From: Ostrea edulis
Taxonomy: Eukaryota
Direction: 5' to 3'
Length of the DNA: 64,000 nt
Assembly (NCBI RefSeq): GCF_947568905.1
Contig: NC_079164.1
Location: forward strand, 82,398,001 to 82,462,000
Below, piece after piece: positions 17,201-46,105 of this stretch. The first letter of the stretch is position 1, and each line of letters starts with the position of its first letter. The translations under genes and the position numbers were made by a program. The notes beneath the pieces are model-generated. The model was not told where the DNA came from. It was given only the letters and a program-made list of their open reading frames with translations, and ran no database searches.

Positions 17201-20200
17201 GTAAATACTATATTGGAAGGTATATACAGTGTATTTGCAACAACCTTTCAGTTAAGAAAGAACATAATTCTTATTTTATACGAGTACAATCACAGTTCTG
17301 TAGACGGTATCAGCTTATTCACCATTGGTACCAATGTTTACCATTCAATTTGGTAATTTTCCTTGGTTGCCTATTTTGCAGGTCAACTAGATGGAATTTT
17401 CAGTATTTAGTACCTTCTTTCAAAATGTTGACTGGTCAATGCATCATGACACATTTATTTCATGTCATTTGTTCACAACTTATAATACCACTACAGATAA
17501 GCACTAAATATTAAACTTCCTTCATTAGGATGAAAGTAAATATACATATCTGATCCTAGGTAATATGATAGAAGGACTAACTTTTCTGAATTTGCATAGT
17601 ATATTTTAAATAACTGGCTATATTTACACAAATTTCTTCTTATAATTAAGAATTTCAGCGGGGAACTACTCATTGCTATTGGTTAACCTTGGTTGCCAAA
17701 GATAGCTATTTTGACATTGGGTGCGTTCAGAGTAAACCCAATGGTACCATCACCGATTTGCCAATGATAAATATTTAAGTCATTGGTACCATTGGATCCT
17801 TGTGTACTCTGAACGAGTTTGGGTTACAAATGGTGAGAAATCCAACAATGGTACCATTGGTGTACTACTAGCTGATCAGTTAGTACGAAATGTCCGAGAT
17901 ATTCGCTCATATCACCTTTGTGAATAATTTGTACCAAGAAGACGCGTTTAGAAAAATGTTTTTAAGTCCTATTAATTACTCTCTCCAGCAGATTATTTTC
18001 TCCATCTTCGCTAGCCTAGAGTTTTCGGTCCATAAATGTGAAGCTGAGTGGACCAAAAACCCTTTGGCTAACGAAGATGTAGTTTCTCTTGTAAAACATC
18101 ATGAGTATAGATCATCTGATGAAATGATTAGACTGGGAGATTACTATACCATATCACTTACACTTGATGTTTTTAAAACCCATTTCCGTCTATGCAGGGG
18201 TATGTTTGAAGCAATTTGTCGGAAATTGTCTTTAGTTGATGTCTGTGAAGATTTATAAGGGGGAAAGATGTGATACAAAATCGGTTTCTTTCAGTGGGTA
18301 AAGTGTGTACGTAATGCCCGCCACTTTTGATTACGTCATAAATAGAGTTACCAATGCTAACAGAGCTCTAGGTTGTCTGCAGAAATGTTTAACATTGGTA
18401 TATTTTATTGGCAAACATTGGTACCATTGTTGTACCAATGGAAAAAAAATTTGCCAATGGGAACTCATATCAACCAACGGTAGTACATGTAATCCATTGG
18501 GTGCATTCAGAGTACTACCACTGGTTGACAAAAGTTACCATCGGCAGAATTTTTACCATTGGTATGACAATTGTACCAATGTCTGCCATCAAGAGTTATC
18601 AATGGAAAACATTTCTGCAGACAACCTAGAGCTCTGTTAGCATTGGTAATTTTATCAAAGACATAATCAAAAATGGCGGGCATTTTGTACAGGCTGAAAG
18701 CAAATGATTTTGTAGCACAGCTTTTCCCCTTAAATCTTCATAGACATCAAATGAAGACAATTTCAGACACATTGTTTCAAACATATCCCTGGAGAGATAG
18801 AAAAGGGTTTTAAAAACATCTGAGTGTATATGATGGCATAGTAATCGCTCACTCTAACCATTTCATCCAATGATCTGCTATGTTTTGTAGTGGTTTTCAG
18901 TCCACTATGGTCCTCATTTATGGACCAAAAACTCTTGTCTAGCGAAGATGGAGAAAATAATCTGCAGAAGAAAGTAATTAACAGTACTTAAAAACATATT
19001 TCTAAACGCATCTTCTTGCTGCAGAATTATACATATAGATATGAAGATATCTTTGTTTGACATTTCTAATGCTAACTGATCAGCTAGTGGTATACCAATG
19101 GTACCATTGTTGAATTTCTTACCATTTGTAACCCAAACTCGTTCTAAGTACACAGGGATCTAATGGTACCAAAACTAAAATTTTTACCATTGGCAAATTG
19201 GTGATGGTATCATTGGGTTTACTCTGAATGCACCCATTGGTTAGCAAATACTATTCACACTTTCAAAGATATTTAAAATGGCAAGCATTGGCACCATGGC
19301 AGCCAATGGTAAAATCGGCATTCTACCATACAGAAAATTGTGAACACACCCATACTGGCATAGTTCAAAAGTTATGACCAACGTTACAGCTGAGAACAGA
19401 CAAATAGACAGATGAAAAACAATTCATCCCTACATCTTCAATATTGGGGACATAAGAGCGAACAGCCGGTATATAATAAAGACAGGTGTATAACAAGAGT
19501 AACGCCAACAGTACATAATACGTCTGTGAAGAGCTAATATAGGGTGTTTATCTTACATCATGATTTGTAGAACTTGGCTTCAGGTAGTATCAGCAATCAT
19601 CAGGGTGTGACTTTCTTTGCATCGTAAAAACAGACAAACCATGTACTCTCTATGTAATATTTACACTTTGCATAAGGTATATGTGTGCCAAGTTTGATGG
19701 TCCAACAGTTCAGTTTGTATCCTGCTACTAGCTACGACCTTGACCTTTGACTTTGAGAAACAATAGGCATCCTCCACTTGGCATAAGGTGTATGTGTACA
19801 AAGTTTAACAGTCCTAGCCCCAACAATTCAGTCTCTATACTGCCTACAAGGTTTTCCAATTAAGTGATACTGCAGCCATGACCTTTGACCTTGAAAACAA
19901 TAGGCATCCTCCACTCATCATGGTGATCAAATGTACCAAGTTGCAATATCCTGGAACTTTGGTTTGGTCTGCATCCTGCCTACAAGGTTTTCCTACTAAG
20001 CAATACTGCAACCGTGACCTTTGACCTTGAAAAACAATAGGTATATTCCTCTCATCATGGTGATCAAATGTACTAAGTTGCAATATCCAGGAGCTTATAG
20101 TTTGGTTTGTATCCTGCCCACAATGTTTCCCTTCTTAGTGATACTACAACCTTGACCTTTGACTTCTGACCTTGAAAAACAATAGGCATCTTCCTCTTAT

Positions 20201-23200
20201 CATGGTGATCATATATACCAAGTTTTAATATCCTGGAACTTATGGTTCAGTATGTATCCTTCCTACAAGGTTTTCCTACTAAGTGATACTATGGTCATAG
20301 TATTTTGAACCCTTGGTTCAATACTTTATAGGAGGTTCATTTTATCGTAGTGATAGTTTGAACCCGGGTTCAAAATATTGCAGGGTTAAATATATTATAT
20401 GACACTGGTTTTGGCTTGGTTCTTTTATCTAGAAGGTCAGAGCGGTTACAGTTTTGTTTACCTCCAATAAGTTTTCTGCTCGGGTTTTCTCAATGGTAAG
20501 AGCACGGAGCTCTCTCTCCAGTTCCCTAGTTTTAGTGATGTGATCCTGCAATAAAGTAAGAGTGTTTATGTATAACAAAAGAGCCATAAATGAAACATGA
20601 TTATTCAACCTGTTACCAACATATCAAGTTCATAAAATATTAAAACTTTGTTGACGTTCATAATCAATACAACATACCATCTAACCAGAAAATCAGACTT
20701 CAGATAACTAAGAGAGCTTCAATTTTGTTAATAATTACCCAAATTAAGCATCATATTGACACCAAACATTAAAATGCTATAAATCACAGGCAAACAATAT
20801 TGGCATAGTAAGATGCTTTGTAGGAACAGTGTTGAGATATATGTGTACACATAGTAACTTATTACATGAATGACTTGCATTGATAACTTTTTGTTTCACA
20901 ATAATGTACTCTTCCTAACAAACAGAATGAATTGTTGAATATTCTATTCAAATGATGCTTCTACTTTCTCATTTACAGCTAATTATGGAGATGGATAAAA
21001 ATTTCTAAAATCAAATGATTTGAAGACTACAGCCTTCTATGGTTAAATAACACCGCATGTCTAAACATGAAATAATCCACCAGTCAATAGGCAGAGAATT
21101 AGTAACTCAATGAACATTTGTACAGACACACTCCTTCACATGTAATCCTCTTTTAATAATGTTTTTTATCTTTAATTGAGACTTCAATATTAAAAAAAAA
21201 AAAATAATGTGTAAGATCTAACATATAAAGAGTCTATTGGCAGACACATCGTCTCTCCATGATTGCAAGTCGCCCTGCTTCAAAGACCGCTGTTTTACAA
21301 TTTAAAAATCTTTGAACATGCTAAATACAAAATGATCTGGTTTACCATATTCTAAATATTTTGAACTAATTGAAATCCACAAACTAAAAAACCTAACCAT
21401 AACAAGAAAACAAAGAAAGAGAAAATACAATAGACTATTATGCAGAAAAAAATCAACTCTATTCATAATTTCACACCAAGTGCAATTAAAGACCCCTAAT
21501 TATACCTTCTTACATAACATACTTCAACAGAATTTTTTTTTTAATTCTGAACAATCATTGTTGAATAATAAAGTAATCTAAATTTAAGATCCATGGATAT
21601 CATAATGAATGCTTTCAAAAGCATTTTATTTTGGATCTCAGAGATAATCTGGTTTCTCTTGGAGTTTAGTTTGCTTTCTGTTTGTGCAGATTGAAACTAT
21701 AACTGACCAAAAAAAAAAAAATCCTGAATTGGTGACCACCTTTCATTCATAGATTTCTAAAAATACAGGAAATCTGTAGCAAGTCATATATGAGCTATAT
21801 AAATCTACATTTCAAAGCTTACAAGATTGTGTACATATATATGTACATGTAAATGTTATAGCTTTAAGACGGCTGGGATCAAATTTGGGTGGTCAGTTGG
21901 TAGGTACCATGCCATTTTTTCCAGACTGAGCTACAGTCCTGAAATTTGCACACTGAGAAATCATGCAATATGAAGTACATGTACCTCAAATAATCCTTAC
22001 AAGATGAAAACAGGACAGAACACAAAACCTTCAACAACACGACAGAAGAACAAGAACAAGAGTACCGCAAACGGTACATAATACGCCCGTGAAATGCTTA
22101 CATAGGGTGTTTTTCTTGTGCTATAATTTGTATAACTTTGCTTCAGGTAGTACCAGCCATCATGAGGCTGTGACAAACTTTCATATCAACAAAGGGTCTT
22201 AGCTTAAAAATTGAGATTTCCCCAAAATGGACCAAGTTCAACAACCTGCAATTTTTTTCAAAAATGGAAGAAAATCAAAACCCTTCACCAGATGCACATC
22301 TTCAGTACCTATACAAACACTCCACAAAATAAGAAGGTCCTCACTTGAAAACTGTGGGAGGAGTTGGGCAGACAAATTATGTACCCTTCATAGAAGATTA
22401 ATTTCTAAATAGACTAAGCTTCAACAACCTGTAAATTTCTCAAAAATTGTAGAAAATCAAAATCCATCCCACATGCACATTTTCAATACCCATACAAACA
22501 CTCAACAAAATAAGAAGGTTCTCATTTGAAAACTGTGGAAGAATTATGTACCCTCCATATAATAATTATTTCCAAATAAGGGGGCAAAACTCCTGGAAAA
22601 AAGGTCGAAATGGATCAAAATTGCAGTATGATCCAGAGTGACCCACAAAGAAGCTACACAGCAAGTTTCAGCATGATATGTGGAAGGGAAATGAAATTAT
22701 AAAGAGAAAACCGCGAATGGACGGACGGACTGACGTACAGACATCGCTGTACCATAATACGTCCCGTCTAAAGACGGGCATATAAAAAGTGTACAGTGCT
22801 ACATACAATGAGAGTCACATGACTGCTCATCATCTTCATTCACTATATATGCTGAAGATTAGAAGAAAAGAAGTTAGACTGGGTAACAGGGTTTCACCTT
22901 GATAAACCACCTACAAACAAAGACCTAATAAAATCATTTAGCTAGTGACCCAAGAGTGATAAGACTGTTTGGAAAGGACTTCTAATCAAATAAACACCTC
23001 TGCATGAGAGAGTCCCATCACTTTATCAATATTGATTATAGTGTATACCTATATGCAGTTTTTATCCATCAATCAAAATTTTTGTAAAGTTGTTTTACAA
23101 TTAAGTGACCAAGAAAACATTATATCAAAGTTGACAAAATACAAGATGCATGTGTTTTATTTGCTGAGTGTTGTAATGTATCTATGGATACCTAATAAGT

Positions 23201-32200: not shown

Positions 32201-35200
32201 TTATATGCTCCCCTGATTTTTTTCGTTCACCCGTTTTCAACAAAGAACCTTGTCCATTATTAACACATGCATGCAAAGTTGACTGTTTCTAAGTGCAAAG
32301 TTCCATCTTTTTAAATAGTACTAGTGAGTTTTAATGGAAATATAAAATTTAATCAATGAGTCAACCATTGACACACACAAACACACACATGATTTAAAGC
32401 TTCGAATTCTAATTTTATTTTGCATGTCAAGAATTTTCAAACAGTTGTGAAGTCAATATTTCTGCCCCCCCCCCCCCCCAACTTGCTGTTCAAAGTATGG
32501 GGGGGGGGGGGGATGAGTTCATACATGAGAAGAGGTTTATCTGTGTAATTTAAACCATCTTGAAATACAGAACGATGAAAATCTTGAAATCTTAGCCCTA
32601 TGAAATTAAAGCCCTTTACAGTACCCTGTTTATAAATACTAGTATTTATCTAAAGCTTAGGACTGCAATGATAAATGCATAAATCAACAAGAGGCCCAAG
32701 GGCCTAGAATCACTCTTCTGATAAATTGTACAACCCCACCATTTCTATTCTTAGTCTCTTAGTATTCTAAATCTTTAGTTAAATCCTAAGAATTCAAAAA
32801 AAGTAGGTCAATGTGACCTACTTTTTGGTTTACACATTTTGAGAACCCAAGAAATATCAACTGAGAAAGTTTGATGATATTAAGCCAATTAGTATCTGAA
32901 TATTGAAATATAGCTGTCAAATTCCAATCGTAGGTCATGGTGACCTACTTTTTGGTCAGCGAACTCCGAACATGCAAGACCCATCAACTGACAAAGTTTG
33001 ATGACTGTAGGTCAAATAGTATCTGAAATATATAAATATAGCTGTCAAATTCCAAAAGTAGGTCAAGGTGACCTACTTTTTTGTCAACACCCTTCAAACA
33101 TGCAAGACCCAACAACTGACAAAGTTTGATGACTGTAGGTCAAATAATATCTGAATTATATAAATATAGCCGTCCAATTCCAAAAGTAGGTCAAGGTGAC
33201 CTACTTTTTGGTCGAAACCCTTCGAACATGCAAGACCCATCAACTGACAAAGTTTGATGACTGTAGGTCAAATAGTATCTGAAATATATAAATATAGCCG
33301 TCAAATTCCAAAAGTAGGTCAAGCTGACCTACTTTTTGGTCGACACACTCCGTAGACTCAAGATGCATCAACTGTCAAAGTTTGATGATTGTAGGTCAAT
33401 TAGTGACTGAAATATATAAATATAACTGTCAAATGCCAAAAGTAGGTCACAGTGACCTACTTTTTGGTCGATACACTCCGAAGAATCAAGATGCATCAAC
33501 TGACAAAGTTTGATGATTATAGGTCAAATAGTGTCTGAAATATAGTAATTTAGCTGTCAAATACCAAAAGTAGGTCACGGTGACCTACTTTTTGGTCGAC
33601 ACAAACCGAAGACTGAAGACACATCAACTGACAAAGTTTGATGATCCTAGGTTTTACAGTGCCCAAAATATGCATCTAAAATTGAAAATGTGAAATTTGA
33701 ATATCTGCAAAATTCAAAAAGTAGGTCATTGTGACCTACTTTTTTATAAATATGTTTCAAGGCCTCAAGATGCATCAACTTACAAGATTTGATGACTCTA
33801 AACCTCTCGGTATTTGAAATAACAACTTAAAATATAACTATAAATGATAAGCCATAAAATTCAGAAAGTAGGTCACAGTGACCTATTTTTTAGTTGACGC
33901 ATTTCAAGGTCCCATGATCCACCAACTGACAAGTTTTGGTGATCATAGGCTTCAAAGTGTCCAAGATATGCATCAAAATTAATTTTAAAATAAATACCTG
34001 CAAAATTCAAAAAGTAGGTCACCGTGACCTACTTTTGAGAGAACTTGACACAAGGTCCTAAGATGCATCAACTGTCAAAATTTGATGATCCTAGTCCTTA
34101 TAATGACTAAAATATCAAAGATTTAAGGAAATATAAATTTAGGTCAACTTTGAAGTGACCTTGAGACCACGCCCTTTGCCCCAGGGTAATGCCTTGAACA
34201 ATTTTTAATCTACAACATATCCTCATCCTTATGTGTAAGTTTGGTGATAATCTGCTTAGTGGTTCTTGAGAAGAAGATTTTTTAGCAACCACTACTTTTG
34301 TTTGTATTTTCCTGATTATCTCCCCTTGTTAAAGGGTCACATCCCTCTATTTAGTATGTATGAAAGCCCTTGGGCCAATGATACCCTGTAACAAATTTGA
34401 AAAAAATTGGCCAAGGGGTTCTTGAGTTATAGCCCTTTTTCTAAAAAGTTTACGCACACCGCACAAATGGCCATAGCATTAGCTCTTTGAGCCTTCGGCT
34501 CAGAAGAGCTAAAAATCGCTAAAACGCATCAAAGATGTATATGGCTGAGTTGCAGTTTGGAATGTGTTCATTGGAATGACCCTAATTTGTGAATGTGAAG
34601 GTGAACATTTCCAATAAAATTATGCATGCTTGCATTCATGAAGTAAAAACATGCACATATTTAATATAGTTTATAAATATGAAGCTTTGAATGGCCGCAA
34701 TAGCTATTTAGTGTAATAATGACCTTGACCTTTGGATTTCAAAAGCAACATGAATATTGAATGTCATCAGGATTTGAAGTCTGATAAACATGCACCAGCA
34801 AGTACATGTATAAAAGTTAGTGGCAAGCTCAAATCTACAGTACATGAAAATAGTGAAAAAGAGACCTTGACCTTAAAATAAATAGGAACCTTCATCTTTT
34901 GGATGTGACCAAAATATGCAAGTCTGACAAAGACGCACCAAGTAGTATGAAAGTTAGAGACCGGACAAGCTCAAATCTATGGCATTTAGTGACAAAGAGA
35001 CCTTGACCTTTGTCCTTTTGACCTCAAAATAAATAGGAACCTTTCTCTTTCGGATGTGATCATGTTATGTAAGTCTCACAAAGATGCACCAAAAAGTATG
35101 AAAGTTAGAGACCAGACAAGCTAATTGTGGATGCCGCCCGCCCGACTGGACACCCATTCTTCGCCAATTTAAAAGCAGAGATTTGCTACGCAACTCAGCT

Positions 35201-36574
35201 AATTAGATGTATCTGCATGACACAAATGCTACCGCCTGCAGTAAAGTCAAATGGAGGAAATTCATCGAAACATAGCATTGAATGTGGTATTCATATTGCA
35301 CATTAGACAATTAAAAACTCATCAACAATCCTTTATAAGTTTTAACAGCCATGAAATAAATACAAGTCCATAAAAAATCAACGAACTGAAACAAAACTCA
35401 AACTCAGTCCGTAACTCATCAATATACATCTTTATACAAAAACTCAGTTCAATATCTCAAGGCGTTTAGGAAAAAGTCTGGAAAACTGGTTGTAACAGCA
35501 ATTTGGGCACAACTACATAAAAACAACTCAACAAACCGGAACAAAACTCAAACTCGATCTGTAACTCATAAATATACATCTGCATTTAAAAAACCCAGGC
35601 CAATAGCTCTAGTTATTTAGAAAAAAAAGTTCAGAAAACTGGTTGTAACAGTAATTCTTATACGTTAAAGGGGCACAACTCCATCAAAAATCAAAGAACT
35701 GGAACAAAATTCAAACTCTATCTGTAACTCATCAATATACACCTGCATACAAAAAATTAATTTAATATCTCAAGGCGTTTAGAAAAAAAAGGTCTGGAAA
35801 ACTGGGTGTCACAGAAGGACTGAAGGAAGGACAAGGGTAAAACTATATGTCCCGACCACTTCATGGTGGCGGCATATAAATAGGTCAAACTCAATCTGAT
35901 TAAAATACAGATCTCTCAAATAGCGCTATTTGAGAGATCTGTATTTTAATCAGATTGGGTCAAACACCAAGGTGATGATCATGAGGTCAAACATTTTGGT
36001 ACCAAAAGAAAGGTCTTGTCACAAAAAATACTCATTAGAAATATGAAAGTCCTAGCACTAAGCGTTCAAAAGATATGGCCAAGGTTAAAGTTTTTGTGGA
36101 TAAACAGGCAAACAGACCAAAAACTATATGCCCACCAATCTCTAACTATGGGATTATTACGACGTGCAGTTTTTGGAATCAATTTAGCATGTAAACAGAT
36201 ATTTCCGAACAACATATACATAATGCATATTCTATGTTTGCATACTCAAAGTCATAAGCTGTGACACTGTCATTGAACCTTAAGAACCAAAGTCAAATGT
36301 GACAATGTCAAAGTTTGATGATCTTAGGCCTCATAGTGTGAAAGATATGACCTAGAAACAATTTGACTTTGGAATGCAATTCAAAAGTATGTCACCATAA
36401 CCTACTTTTGGATCATGACACACCACCACCACCACCCCTAGCAAGATGCATTCACTGACTAAGTTTGATGGTCCCAGGCCTCACAGTGCTCAATATACAT
36501 GATCCAGACATGATTTGAATATGTATAGCCATAAAGTTCCAAAATTATGCCACAGTGACCTATCTTTAGGTAGC

Positions 36575-36617
<43 letters not shown>

Positions 36618-39600: not shown

Positions 39601-42457
39601 TTCATGTCAGATACTTTATGTGTTTTACGAGAGCCTGGGTAACTAACATGACACAATATATTGAATCATTGATGAATATGTTTTAAGGAACAAATCAATG
39701 GTACTATTTTTTTCTTTGCATGCAAAGAAACAAAGCATTGTGACACCATGTTATTTACCCCTAGCTTCAGCTGGTGTACAGAAATTTACACCCACCTTGT
39801 TAACCAATCAAAATTAGCCTTACAAGCTACATACGAAATAAAGAGCTTTGCTCTTCAATCTGCCTTCTGCAGCTTTGGTCATTTAAAATTTCAGTTTCAC
39901 AAATTCAGCTCTAATTTACTAAAGACTCTGCTAAGTAAATTAGTAAACAAGAAGTCAAATATAAATGTCATTTCATCATTTTCATAAAATACCCATGCAT
40001 GCAATCTTTTATTTTCATGAGTGTTCCAATTCATACTATCAGGAGATAAACGGTGAATTTTTTTTCTCATAGTATCTTTCCCCGAAACTTAGGTATTAAT
40101 GAAACCAGACATATAAAATGTTATACGTATTGTTCATGGAACTGTCAGTAATCTTATTTTTTTATTCCCAACATATCGGTACATGTATATCTTCAAACAT
40201 CAACAAAATCTAAATGTTTATAAAAATGCTGAAGTGGAGTTTGAAAGTCATGGCATGCATATGCTTGTATCTAGCTGACATATCTTCATTAACATGAAAG
40301 ACTTAAGAGACCAAATAGAACTTCTCTTAAGTAAATACATTGTATTCCATAAAACAGAAGTCAGACCTTTATATCAGCAGGGCAATCCAGTGTTGGCAGC
40401 CTGGAACTTACCTGTAATTTCTCTTATTCTCAAACAATTTCAATGCAATTCAAATGAAAAAATGGGTAAACTTTATGACAGACACATCCCTTACAATCAT
40501 AAATGAAATATTACGGCCGCACAGTGATATTTTCAAGTTTCAGTTGCACTTTACAACTGTTTGTTACAATGCAAACACTGCGGCATACAGGAGTGTTGTA
40601 ACAAAAGAGGCGTCAGTTATTCTAATTAATTCAATTTTAATTCAAGCTGGTATATACTTATGATACTCCAATTTTCAAACCATAGTTTATGGTGAAATAT
40701 TTCTGCCATCACTTATCAGATAATGTTGACTTGTATGATAGATATGTTGATTTGTCAGTTAATTATGTCAACTTGTCAGAAGATTTCGACCACTTGCCAA
40801 GTAATAAGAAGTAAAACAAAAGCCCCATGGGCCACATCGCTCACCTTGGGTCTGCCTTTGTTCAGCTGTTTTGATTTTTAAAACATTTTTTTTTATCTAT
40901 CTTTATTCCCATGAAAATTTTGACCCCATATTGAGGCCTCCACCTGGCCCCAAAGGATCACATCATAACTGCAAATGAATTCACATATCACAGAGATGCC
41001 TCAACACCAATATGACTAACATGATCTTTAATGCTGTTCTGGATAAGACCAAGGTCACACATCATATTCATATGATATTTTGTCATAAGAAATCTATATA
41101 CAAAATATGAAAGCTCTATCTCAAATAGTTCAGGAGATATTGAATAGGTCAGATTTTTATTAAAAGAAGGTTGAACTTCCATGTCAAGGTCAAATAACAA
41201 AGTATAACAAGGCTTTGCCATAAAGAATATCTACACAAAATATGAAAGCTTTACCTTAAATAGTTCAGGAGATATTGATTACATCAGGTTTTTAAGAAAC
41301 TGGGCCAAGGTCATATGATAAAATATAATTGTATCACAAAGTATTGTCTTCAAGAATCTATATACAAATTTTAAATATGAAAACCCTACCTTGAATAATT
41401 CTGAAGATATTTAACAGATTATGTTTTAATTTTAAAGTAGGTCCAATTCCAAGGTCACAAGGTCAAAGGTCATAGTGTGAAATGAAAGGTCTTGCCATGA
41501 GAAATCTATATACACAATACGGAAGATCTACCTTAAATAGTTCAGGAGATATTGAATAGGTCAGAGATTTAAAAAGTAGGTCCAACTCTGAAGTCAAGGT
41601 CACAAAATCAAACTTCACGAAATAGTAAGGTCTTGTCATACAGAATTTAAATACAAAATATGAAAGCCTTGCCTTAAATAGTTCAGGAGATATTCAATAG
41701 GTCAGGGTTTTATTAAAAAGCAGGCCAAACTCAATTAAAGGTCAAAAGATCAAACACCATTGTATATTAAGATCTTGCCATAAAGAATCTATATATACAA
41801 ATAATGAAAGTTTCACCTAAAATAGTTCCGGATACATTTAAAAGGAGATGTTTTCATAAAAATAGGCCAAACCCCAAGCACAAGGTGAATGGCCATGATC
41901 TAATATGAAAGATCTTGCAATAAGAAATATTCATAGAAATATGAAATATCTACCTCAAATACTTCACAACATACTGAATAGGTCAAATTTTTTATTAAAA
42001 GTAGATCAAACTTTCAGTTCAAAGTCATAAAATCACAAACCATTGCATTACATGAAAGGTTTTTCCATAAAGTATGTAATACACAAAATATGAAAGCCCT
42101 AGCTTAGATACTTCTCAAGATATTTTCAAAGATTTTTCCTATAAATCAGCATATAACACTTTGATCCCCTATTGTGGCCCCACCATACCCTTAGGGACCA
42201 TGATTTTCACACAATTGGATCTTCTCTATGTCAGGAAGCTTTCATGTAAATTTCCACTTTTCTTGTCCAGTGTTTTTTTTTTGAGAAGAATTTCCCAATA
42301 TACTTGCATGCAAAACTTTGATCCCCTATTGTGGCCCCATCCTATCCCCGGGGCCATGATTTTAACAAATTTGAATTCACACTATATGTCAGGAAGCTTT
42401 GATGCAAATTTGAACTTTTTTTGGCCCAGTAGTTCTTGACAAGTCAACAAAATTATA

Positions 42458-45499: not shown

Positions 45500-46105
45500 C
45501 AGACAGACAGGACAAAACAAAATCTCCCCTCCTCAAAATCATAGGGGTCATCTTCTCCTGAAGATGTACCAGTGTACCAAGTTTGATGTCTGTCAAACAA
45601 AGGGTTCTCAAGATAATGAGTGGACAGTATGTTCCTATGTCCAGTTTGACCCTTGACCATGTGACTTCAAAATCAATAGTGGTTATCTTCTCCTGGAGAT
45701 GTACCAGTGTACTAAGTTTGATGTCTGTCAAGCAAAGGGTTCTCAAGATATTGAGCTGACAGTATATTCCTATGTCCAGTTTGACCTTTGACCATGTACC
45801 TCAAAATCAATGGGGTCATTTACTCCTTGGGATGTACCAGTGTACCAAGTTTGATGTCTGTCAAGCAAAGAGTTCTCAAGATATGTAGCGGACAATGTCT
45901 TCCTATGCCCAGAGTAGCTTGACCTTTTACCTTTTGACCTGATAAACAATAGGTGTCCTCTTCTACTCATAACCAACCCACATATGAAATATCATTATGA
46001 TCAAGTGAATGGTTCTCAAGATATTGAGCGGACAACATGTGGTCTACCGACACACCTACCGACTGACCGACCAATAGGTGCAAAGTAATATGCCCCTCTT
46101 CTTTG
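45500..46105 (+). mobile_element. HINE-type element with about 3-4 core repeats
   Basis: Tandem AAATCAATAGGGGTCATCT...ATGTACCAGTGTACCAAGTTTGATGTCTGTCAAGCAAAGGGTTCTCAAGATA units, GACC microsatellite and terminal motif as at 31650-31730. Confidence 0.7.

What the first reader, a model, noticed from the sequence alone, without database searches (positions are those of the whole stretch)
32805..34030. Satellite array of ten perfect ERE-type palindromes with invariant half-sites and variable spacers
Seen: AGGTCAnnnTGACCT at 32805, 32932, 33060, 33188, 33316, 33444, 33572, 33723, 33870 and 34016. Spacers are ATG, TGG, AGG, AGG, AGC, CAG, CGG, TTG, CAG, CCG (8 different), yet all 20 half-sites are intact, even in the three diverged 146-151 bp units. 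Most extend to AAAAGTAGGTCA-N3-TGACCTACTTTT. Established: IR3 AGGTCA is the estrogen response element, AAAGTAGGTCA fits the ROR/Rev-erb monomer site, and mollusc ER orthologues are constitutive ERE binders. Inference: a transposon-borne multimerised nuclear-receptor platform. A stem-conserved DNA/RNA hairpin used in rolling-circle replication would explain it equally well.
Basis: partly seen in the sequence, partly recalled or inferred. Interest (0 to 1): 0.7.

Follow-up and report, generated by a model that had tools for sequence, protein, structure and literature searches.

The report
Transposon-borne hairpin repeats mimicking oestrogen-response elements
The ten perfect "oestrogen-response-element" palindromes are real, but they are the conserved hairpin box of the tandem repeats inside a young, very abundant rolling-circle-type (Helentron/HINE-like) transposon of a flat-oyster genome, and once a copy has inserted they decay like neutral DNA, so this is an ordinary mobile element, not a host hormone-receptor platform.

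Summary
Observation confirmed. All ten AGGTCA-N3-TGACCT sites lie at the stated coordinates (10 found, 0.01 expected).

They are the cores of 12-13 bp-arm palindromes, one per 128-151 bp unit of a tandem array. The array is the centre of a ~1.83 kb non-coding element (window 32686-34515). That element has more than 1,700 first-look matches in the 895 Mb genome, which holds 8,161 perfect 27-nt palindromes.

Read on the minus strand, the ends fit the HINE (non-autonomous Helentron) layout:
- T-run, 5' subTIR and its IR hairpin;
- 3' subTIR, short palindrome and a TT end;
- insertion into T-runs without target duplication.

The "variable spacers" are position-specific and inherited from the source element. 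They are not local mutations.

Key test on 48 copies:
- Private (post-insertion) substitutions hit the stems at the background rate (ratio 1.08, CI 0.78-1.48).
- Variants shared between copies are absent from the stems (0 of 166 columns, against 43 of 772).
- No compensatory changes were seen.

So the constraint acts on elements that propagate, not on inserted copies.

The closest precedent is DTC84/pearl/Cg_HINE of bivalves: ordered repeat variants with a conserved palindrome in each repeat. This is a new member of a known kind.

The parts
32686..34515 (-). Whole non-autonomous element (about 1.83 kb; this copy has 10 full units, the commonest form has 11). The minus strand is the Helentron-convention orientation.
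   Evidence: blastn against 29 other genomic copies gives 94-96% identity with sharp ends at about 32686 and 34515/6. Termini stacked across copies. No ORF of note. Nothing in Rfam reaches the gathering score.
34511..34515 (-). Terminal A5 on the + strand, which is the T5 string at the 5' boundary in Helentron orientation.
   Evidence: Constant in 20 of 23 copies. Paralogous empty sites show insertion inside A-runs.
34481..34510 (-). 5' subTIR (34497-34510, GGCTCAGAAGAGCT on +) with its complementary IR (34481-34493). Together they form the 5'-end hairpin.
   Evidence: DNA fold -13.6 kcal/mol, z = -4.35, 0 of 200 shuffles fold as well.
32712..32721 (-). 3' subTIR. The family consensus is GCTCTTCTGA on +; this copy has A for G at 32712. 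It is inverted relative to 34500-34509.
   Evidence: Stack of 29 copies and family consensus: 10 bp perfect, 12 of 13 with one mismatch.
32692..32705 (-). Short terminal palindrome, AGGCCC-AA-GGGCCT, 6 nt from the 3' terminus in Helentron orientation.
   Evidence: The fold gives a 5-bp stem, but its energy does not differ from shuffles.
32799..34036 (.). Ten palindromes with arms of up to 12-13 bp and an AGGTCA-N3-TGACCT core. The 27-nt spans are 32799-32825, 32926-32952, 33054-33080, 33182-33208, 33310-33336, 33438-33464, 33566-33592, 33717-33743, 33864-33890 and 34010-34036.
   Evidence: Each folds as a 10-12 bp hairpin in single-stranded DNA; unit z-scores are -2.8 to -4.5.
32858..34088 (+). 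Second conserved box, CAACTGACAAAGTTTGATGA, once per unit, about 40 nt after each palindrome. It is itself an imperfect inverted repeat (ATCAAC...GTTTGAT). Ten copies: 32858, 32985, 33113, 33241, 33369, 33497, 33625, 33776, 33923, 34069.
   Evidence: 10 matches, 0.01 expected. Inter-unit alignment. Same private/shared variant pattern as the stems.
34141..34161 (.). Degenerate 12th unit with AGGTCA-N9-TGACCT.
   Evidence: row u12.
34162..34480 (-). Non-repetitive inner part of the 5' module in Helentron orientation. It contains a motif (AGTGGTTCTTGAGAAGAAGAT) that is common in other repeats of the window.
   Evidence: 1,763 first-look candidates for window 34100-34516, which spans this stretch; the best 40 are 99-100% identical..

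Best explanation
The array is the central tandem-repeat module of a young, high-copy, non-coding DNA transposon. Its ends have the architecture of HINEs, the non-autonomous partners of Helentron rolling-circle transposons. In bivalves this kind is known as pearl, DTC84 or Cg_HINE.

Each repeat unit carries two conserved boxes: the 27-nt palindrome whose core happens to equal a consensus ERE, and CAACTGACAAAGTTTGATGA. Both are kept invariant in the lineage of elements that actually propagate. They then decay neutrally in every inserted copy.

The most likely mechanism is inferred, not shown. The boxes would be cis-acting signals for mobilisation: repeated recognition sites, probably presented as hairpins on the single-stranded transposition intermediate, for the Rep/helicase of an autonomous partner. 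They would be comparable to the terminal hairpins and subTIRs. The loop is unconstrained, so it is not a nick site.

The number of middle units varies between copies through unequal exchange or slippage.
For: Shown:
1. Dispersed family. One unit gives 881 first-look candidates and the flank gives 1,763, at 98-100% identity. There are 8,161 perfect 27-nt palindromes genome-wide, against 0 for the reversed control.
2. Ends. T5 plus subTIR plus IR hairpin at one end; subTIR, short palindrome and TT at the other; no terminal inverted repeat; no coding capacity. Three paralogous empty sites show insertion inside A/T-runs without target duplication. This matches the criteria in PMC4067079 and PMC7492417.
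3. The order of loop variants is fixed across copies, while only the number of middle units varies. The same was described for DTC84 (PMC3879986).
4. Among the 11 consensus units, 19 of 24 stem columns are invariant and 0 of 3 loop columns are, while the rest of the unit diverges strongly.
5. In 48 aligned copies, using the CNV-free units, private substitutions are 49/7752 cells in the stems (0.63%) and 212/36318 in other array positions (0.58%). The ratio is 1.08, CI 0.78-1.48. Shared variants are 0/7752 cells against 123/36318 (p = 8e-11). By columns they are 0/166 against 43/772 (p = 3e-4).
6. Box 2 behaves the same way.
7. The genome holds at least 74 Helitron_like_N matches, many in open frames of 1,200-2,100 aa, so candidate autonomous partners exist.
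Against: - No autonomous partner with the same termini was identified.
- No microsatellite, a usual DINE-1/Cg_HINE feature, was found.
- The subTIR is only 10 bp perfect.
- No compensatory stem changes were seen: 0 of 77 mutated palindromes, and 1 double genome-wide against 0.75 expected. Hairpin formation is therefore plausible from energies but not demonstrated by covariation.
- Read-through or termination at a palindrome is rare: only 3 junctions fuse an element end to the first palindrome.
- The terminal region is not detectably homologous to the units.
- The 48 copies are the most similar ones, not a random sample.
- A modest constraint on the inner 12 nt cannot be excluded (rate ratio 0.70, CI 0.46-1.04, against array positions).
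Confidence: 0.72

Rival explanations
1. Host-exapted platform. The arrays are multimerised binding sites for oyster ER, ERR or ROR-type nuclear receptors and are maintained by host selection as regulatory modules.
For: The core equals the consensus ERE (IR3 of AGGTCA), and the 5' extension AAAGT-AGGTCA fits the monomeric ROR/Rev-erb type site (consensus from established knowledge). Ten to fourteen sites per element would give high avidity.
Against: Private substitutions hit the stems at the background rate. 16.6% of palindromes in near-identical copies are already mutated, and only 26 of 48 copies keep all cores intact. There are more than 1,700 dispersed copies. The symmetry extends to 12-13 bp per arm. 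A second box unrelated to receptors is equally conserved.
Confidence: 0.04
2. The transposon exploits a host receptor. The selection seen at the level of propagating elements is for binding a host nuclear receptor, for example the constitutively active mollusc ER in the germ line. The receptor would help the element by opening chromatin or by tethering.
For: The constraint is sequence-specific rather than structural: there is no covariation. It acts only in propagating lineages. That pattern is what a protein-binding site needed for mobilisation would show, and the sequence is a perfect ERE.
Against: Nothing links the element to receptors beyond the motif match. The conserved arms are twice as long as a half-site. 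Box 2 needs a separate explanation. A non-coding DNA element needs no transcription of its own.
Confidence: 0.08
3. By-product without function. The palindromes are recombination or slippage hot spots, as proposed for DTC84. Their uniformity would come from homogenisation among units, not from selection.
For: Unit number varies greatly between copies that differ by only about 0.6% in sequence: lengths run from 1,447 to 2,449 bp in otherwise intact copies. DTC84's authors proposed the palindrome as a hot spot for array-length change.
Against: Conversion tracts that kept both 12-nt arms identical in all units would also homogenise the 3-nt loop between them. Yet the loops stay position-specific and stable across copies. 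The edge units are 30-50% diverged outside the boxes.
Confidence: 0.1
4. A different transposon class: a cut-and-paste MITE (as pearl and DTC84 were first described, with an AA duplication), or a SINE-like retroposon with a short A-tail.
For: The + strand 3' end is A5 and many copies begin with AA. DTC84 was originally read as a MITE with an AA target duplication.
Against: There are no terminal inverted repeats. The A-run has a constant length. The empty sites show no duplication beyond the A-run itself. The subTIR/IR/palindrome layout matches HINEs.
Confidence: 0.05

Closest known systems
[quoted passage not shown]
   Same: Flanking modules with short subterminal inverted repeats enclose a short array of ~130-160 bp core repeats. 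The order of repeat variants is fixed whatever the copy number. A conserved palindrome in each core repeat lies in a low-variability segment. Copy number is high and array length is variable.
   Different: The palindrome here is 27 nt (12-nt arms, 3-nt loop) with an ERE-like core, not the 12-nt TTGTCCGGACAA. It lies at the start of the unit as TRF phases it. No microsatellite was found. The arrays are longer, mostly 8-11 and up to 14 or more units, instead of 1-6. There is no detectable sequence similarity.
Cg_HINE elements of Crassostrea gigas and HINE/DINE-1 non-autonomous Helentrons (PMC7492417, PMC4067079)
   Same: 5' subTIR plus IR. 3' subTIR followed by a short palindrome. T strings at the boundaries. 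Insertion into oligo-T without target duplication. Central satellite-like repeats always in one orientation. Non-coding and in high copy number.
   Different: None of the diagnostic 8-10-mers of this family occurs in the held C. gigas supplements, so it is a different, probably Ostrea-lineage, family. The 5' module is long (about 350 bp) and lacks a microsatellite. The partner was not identified.
Consensus oestrogen response element, and transposon-borne receptor sites such as those described in mammalian Alu and MIR elements (from my own knowledge, not checked here)
   Same: The 15-bp core is a perfect IR3 of AGGTCA, and it is spread through the genome by a mobile element.
   Different: There is no evidence of receptor binding or of host constraint. 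The symmetry extends well beyond the half-sites.
Origin hairpins of HUH-Rep rolling-circle replicons (geminivirus, circovirus and plasmid double-strand origins; from my own knowledge)
   Same: A stem-loop in an element thought to move through single-stranded DNA made by an HUH nuclease.
   Different: In those origins the loop carries the conserved nick site. Here the loop is the most variable part of the whole element, so the palindromes are not nick sites.

Membership tests
HINE / non-autonomous Helentron | No coding capacity | tested here: met
   Only one 61-aa ORF overlaps the 1.83 kb element.
HINE / non-autonomous Helentron | Subterminal inverted repeats of about 11-15 bp, close to the 5' end and some tens of bp from the 3' end | tested here: met
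   GCTCTTCTGA / TCAGAAGAGC is 10 bp perfect, or 12 of 13 with one mismatch, in the consensus of 48 copies. It starts right after the T5 at one end and 36 nt from the other end. It is one base short of the 11-bp rule used to define families.
HINE / non-autonomous Helentron | IR complementary to the 5' subTIR (DINE-1 and Cg_HINE type) | tested here: met
   34481-34493 pairs with 34497-34510. The fold is -13.6 kcal/mol, z = -4.35.
HINE / non-autonomous Helentron | Short palindrome between the 3' subTIR and the 3' terminus | tested here: met
   AGGCCC-AA-GGGCCT at 32692-32705, 6 nt from the end, is present in all stacked copies. Its fold energy alone does not differ from shuffles.
HINE / non-autonomous Helentron | T strings at the boundaries, insertion into T-rich or TT sites, no target-site duplication | tested here: met
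   Three paralogous empty sites (L055 against L012 and L067 at 96%; L072 against L054 and L063; L038 against L064) have an A-run on the + strand at the insertion point and no duplication. The sample is small.
HINE / non-autonomous Helentron | Autonomous Helentron (Rep-helicase-endonuclease) sharing the termini | not tested
HINE / non-autonomous Helentron | Microsatellite next to the central repeats (typical of DINE-1 and Cg_HINE, optional in mite HINEs) | tested here: not met
   TRF reports no microsatellite inside 32686-34515.
pearl / DTC84-type tandem-repeat-carrying element of bivalves | [quoted passage not shown] | tested here: met
   The loop series and the edge units are fixed in 51 copies, and only the middle units vary in number. 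The palindrome is invariant across the 11 consensus units. The definition comes from PMC3879986.
Functional oestrogen / nuclear-receptor response element | Sequence match to IR3 AGGTCAnnnTGACCT | tested here: met
   Ten perfect matches in the window and 8,161 perfect extended palindromes in the genome.
Functional oestrogen / nuclear-receptor response element | Maintenance by host purifying selection at inserted sites | tested here: not met
   The private substitution rate ratio of stems to array is 1.08 (CI 0.78-1.48). A halved rate is rejected at P = 1e-6. The inner half-sites alone give 0.70 (CI 0.46-1.04) against array positions and an odds ratio of 1.17 against the flanks.
Functional oestrogen / nuclear-receptor response element | Receptor occupancy and reporter activity | not testable with these tools
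   This needs EMSA, DAP-seq, CUT&Tag and a reporter assay.
HUH-Rep origin hairpin with nick site in the loop | Conserved loop sequence | tested here: not met
   0 of 3 loop columns are invariant among units. The loops carry the highest density of shared variants, 1.4-3.4% of cells.
Structure-selected hairpin (RNA or DNA) | Compensatory changes that keep pairing | tested here: not met
   0 of 77 mutated palindromes changed on both arms. Genome-wide there are 158 single-arm changes and 1 double for one G:C pair, with 0.75 expected by chance.

The most novel reading that the evidence does not exclude
A single Helentron-type family has recently seeded the flat-oyster genome with about 10,000 perfect consensus EREs in clusters of 8-14. 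The sequence-specific constraint seen only in propagating copies would exist because the element depends on a host nuclear receptor (the constitutive mollusc ER or ERR) for mobilisation. That would make the family both a receptor-dependent transposon and a large, evolving reservoir or sink of receptor sites.
Probability: 0.07. Interest if true: 0.7.

Novelty: new member of a known kind. Interest (0 to 1): 0.25.

Why it matters
It removes a tempting false lead. A perfect, multimerised ERE array in a mollusc genome turns out to be the conserved box of a transposon's central repeats.

It adds a small positive result for the biology of mobile elements. Private and shared variants differ sharply in the two boxes. 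This shows that boxes inside the "satellite-like" central repeats of a HINE-type element are constrained in the propagating lineage and neutral afterwards. That argues the central repeats are not mere cargo and contribute to mobilisation. For bivalve HINE, pearl and DTC84 elements this had only been suggested from reduced variability.

The family is young, with about 0.6% private divergence, and abundant. It would therefore be a good substrate for finding an active Helentron and for testing what its hairpins do.

Tried and rejected
1. Alternative termination at the palindromes. I asked whether the palindromes serve as alternative rolling-circle stop sites. A junction fusing the element's end to the first palindrome occurs only 3 times genome-wide, two of them in one locus. 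Not supported.
2. Array born from the terminal hairpin. AGGCCC-AA-GGGCCT and AGGTCA-N3-TGACCT differ by two apparently compensatory pairs. But local alignment of the terminal 85 bp, or of the other flank, against the units scores no better than shuffles: 127 of 500 and 178 of 200 shuffles reach the observed score. Rejected as unsupported.
3. Covariation. None was found.
4. Known RNA families. There are only sub-threshold chance hits to bacterial sRNA models, caused by the hairpins.
5. Identity with published C. gigas Cg_HINE or satellitome sequences and Helitron boxes. Diagnostic 8-10-mers are absent from the held supplements. The O. edulis satellitome supplement is not held, so I could not tell whether the 128-bp unit is one of the published OedSat families.
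6. Loop hypermutability. The private rate in loops is 1.0% against 0.6%, which is not significant (p = 0.13). The loops look unconstrained, not demonstrably hypermutable.
I did not try to get them another way.
Full report
**The observation**

Shuffles of the window give 0.01.

Tandem Repeats Finder reports a 128-bp period over 32799-33644 (6.6 copies, 86% matches). Three further units of 151, 147 and 146 bp follow.

The inverted-repeat scan shows that the receptor-like core is only the inner part of a longer palindrome. The arms are 12-13 bp (AAAAGTAGGTCA / TGACCTACTTTT) around 3 central bases, or a single one. Eight of the ten reach 12 perfect pairs.

The ten sites are copies within one array, so they are not independent.

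**What surrounds it**

A single unit finds 881 first-look candidates in the window's own 895 Mb assembly, and the best are 98-100% identical. The non-repetitive stretch 3' of the array (34100-34516) finds 1,763, and the best 40 are 99-100% identical.

blastn of the region against 29 other loci gives 94-96% identity that begins sharply at about 32686 and ends at 34515/6. Stacking the junctions shows unrelated DNA beyond both ends.

The array is thus the centre of a ~1.83 kb dispersed element. It has no ORF of note, and nothing in Rfam reaches a gathering score. The perfect 27-nt palindrome occurs 8,161 times in the genome, and the reversed control occurs 0 times.

The genome size (894.8 Mb) and its ten large chromosome-scale pieces match the published Ostrea edulis assembly (PMC10979132). 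This is an inference from size and chromosome number.

**Which kind of element**

There are no terminal inverted repeats. On the minus strand the element begins with T5, followed directly by a subTIR (AGCTCTTCTGAGCC). Four bases later comes its complement, and the two form a strong hairpin (-13.6 kcal/mol, z = -4.35).

The element ends with the inverted copy of the subTIR (10 bp perfect, 12 of 13 with one mismatch), 6 nt, a short palindrome (AGGCCC-TT-GGGCCT), and then CTTGTT.

This yielded three paralogous empty sites. In each, the insertion point is an A-run on the plus strand, which is a T-run in this orientation. No target duplication is seen.

This is the layout that defines HINEs, the non-autonomous Helentrons. 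The criteria are subTIRs, an IR, a 3' palindrome, T strings at the boundaries, insertion at TT without duplication, and optional central repeats (PMC4067079). The same layout was found for the eleven Cg_HINE families that carry the satellite-like repeats of Crassostrea gigas (PMC7492417).

Two things are missing. There is no microsatellite.

**The spacers are inherited, not mutated in place**

In 51 distinct full copies the loops follow the same ordered series: ATG, TGG, then one to ten AGG/AGT units, then CAG, CGG, CTG, CGG, CCG. Only the number of middle units varies, with element lengths of 1,447-2,449 bp and a mode near 1,960 bp (11 units).

The window's copy has 10 units and three private loop changes: AGC, TTG and CAG.

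[quoted passage not shown] Two conserved motifs per monomer are known for the BIV160/Cg170 group (PMC5139131).

**Where the constraint lies**

The 11 consensus units were aligned with each other.
- 19 of the 24 stem columns are invariant.
- None of the 3 loop columns is invariant.
- A second box, CAACTGACAAAGTTTGATGA, is nearly invariant. It occurs ten times in the window.
- The rest of the unit diverges strongly, most of all in the last three units.

Homogenisation among units cannot explain this. A conversion tract covering both arms would also homogenise the loop between them.

I then aligned 48 copies and separated two kinds of variant. Private variants are seen in one copy and arose after insertion. 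Shared variants are seen in two or more copies and were therefore carried by an element that propagated. CpG columns were left out.

In the units whose number does not vary (1-2 and 7-11):

| Class | Private variants | Shared variants |
|---|---|---|
| Stems | 49/7752 cells (0.63%) | 0/7752 cells |
| Other array positions | 212/36318 cells (0.58%) | 123/36318 cells |
| Flanks | 0.41% | 45/21453 cells |

- For private variants, stems against other array positions give an odds ratio of 1.08 (p = 0.63).
- For shared variants, stems against other array positions give p = 8e-11, and stems against flanks give p = 1.5e-6.
- Counted by columns, which is more conservative, shared variants occur in 0 of 166 stem columns, 43 of 772 other array columns (p = 3e-4) and 15 of 449 flank columns (p = 0.015). 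Private variants occur in 46 of 166 stem columns and 197 of 772 other array columns (p = 0.56).
- A halved substitution rate in the stems is rejected at P = 1e-6. The rate ratio is 1.08 (CI 0.78-1.48). For the inner half-sites alone, over all units, it is 0.70 (CI 0.46-1.04) against array positions, and the odds ratio against the flanks is 1.17.
- Box 2 shows the same contrast.
- 77 of 464 palindromes already carry a stem change, and only 26 of 48 copies keep every core intact. The window's fully intact copy is therefore unremarkable.

The constraint acts on elements that propagate and not on inserted copies.

**Structure or sequence?**

None of the 77 mutated palindromes changed on both arms.

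Genome-wide, one G:C pair shows 158 single-arm changes (TGACCT to TGATCT or its mirror), scattered over chromosomes and unit types. It shows one compensated double, where 0.75 is expected by chance.

Single-stranded DNA folds of the units place the palindrome in a 10-12 bp hairpin, with z-scores of -2.8 to -4.5. But there is no covariation to show that pairing, rather than sequence, is what matters.

The stems are identical in all units, so the constraint is sequence-specific, as expected for a protein-recognition site. The loop is the least constrained part of the element, with shared variants in 1.4-3.4% of cells. This excludes a nick-site loop of the kind found in HUH-Rep origins.

**Mechanism**

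Shown:
- a HINE-type architecture;
- recent massive amplification, with about 0.6% private divergence;
- two boxes per unit that are constrained only in the propagating lineage;
- the potential to form hairpins.

Inferred: the boxes are repeated cis signals for the partner's Rep/helicase on the single-stranded intermediate. They would be analogous to the terminal hairpins, and to the multiple subterminal transposase-binding motifs of other DNA transposons (the analogy is from my own knowledge).

Tried and not supported:
- Use of the palindromes as alternative stop sites: only 3 fused junctions.
- Origin of the units from the terminal hairpin region: no significant similarity.

**Rivals**

- A transposon that depends on a host nuclear receptor is not excluded. 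It would produce the same private/shared pattern, but nothing beyond the motif match supports it, and the conserved arms are twice as long as a half-site.
- A pure recombination hot spot explains the variation in unit number but not the intact arms around free loops.
- A cut-and-paste MITE or a SINE is unlikely given the ends and the empty sites.

**Comparison and novelty**

The closest known elements are DTC84, pearl and Cg_HINE.

This family is distinct in sequence. Its diagnostic words are absent from the held C. gigas supplements. I could not check the published O. edulis satellitome, whose sequences are not held. That paper reports eleven Helitron-related satellites making up 3% of the genome (PMC11136912), so the 128-bp unit may already be catalogued there.

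I rate it a new member of a known kind. Its interest is low to moderate and lies mainly in the clean evidence that boxes in the central repeats are constrained at the level of the element.

Noticed in passing
window 35889-35960: A 72-nt spacer-less palindrome (36-nt arms, 97% complementary) lies 1.4 kb downstream of the element.
   Followed up: no
window 32465-32512: A run of about 15 C faces a run of about 14 G across about 17-20 nt, some 170 bp upstream of the element. It could be a G/C homopolymer hairpin or an assembly oddity. A separate C39 run lies at 36577-36615.
   Followed up: no
window 34258-34278 and seven other sites (48884, 54130, 54296, 57165, 57370, 62801, 62968): The motif AGTGGTTCTTGAGAAGAAGAT, from the element's non-repetitive module, recurs with up to 3 mismatches in other repeats of the window (8 matches, 0 expected). 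By eye it resembles a stretch of a C. gigas CL1 (Cg170/HindIII-type) monomer printed in a supplement. This suggests a motif shared among oyster Helitron-type repeats.
   Followed up: partly
window 19836-20290, 35378-35656, 41479-41886, 45531-45912, 57261-57596: There are five more short arrays of 135-172 bp units, probably central repeats of other HINE-type families. The 145-bp unit at 19836 contains TGACCTTTGACCT, a direct repeat of the same hexamer.
   Followed up: no
L006 (G000:C3:51699708-51702835): At least three head-to-tail copies with a period of about 1,721 bp lack the 113-bp end module. The A5 end of one copy is fused to the A-run of the first palindrome of the next. Only one other such junction exists in the genome.
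   Followed up: partly
genome-wide; in the held copies, stem position 18 of the 27-nt palindrome: TGACCT to TGATCT is a recurrent change. There are 158 sites genome-wide against 8,161 perfect palindromes, and it accounts for 7 of the 77 palindromes with a stem change in the 48 copies. It is not a CpG site. The stems also mutate slightly faster than the element's flanks (0.63% against 0.41%, p = 0.015).
   Followed up: partly
window 33007, 33135, 33263, 33391 (+ strand): Units 2-5 of this copy carry a third, lone GTAGGTCA about 60 nt after the palindrome. A sixth-unit copy at about 33519 has decayed to ATAGGTCA. So the octamer occurs up to three times per unit.
   Followed up: no
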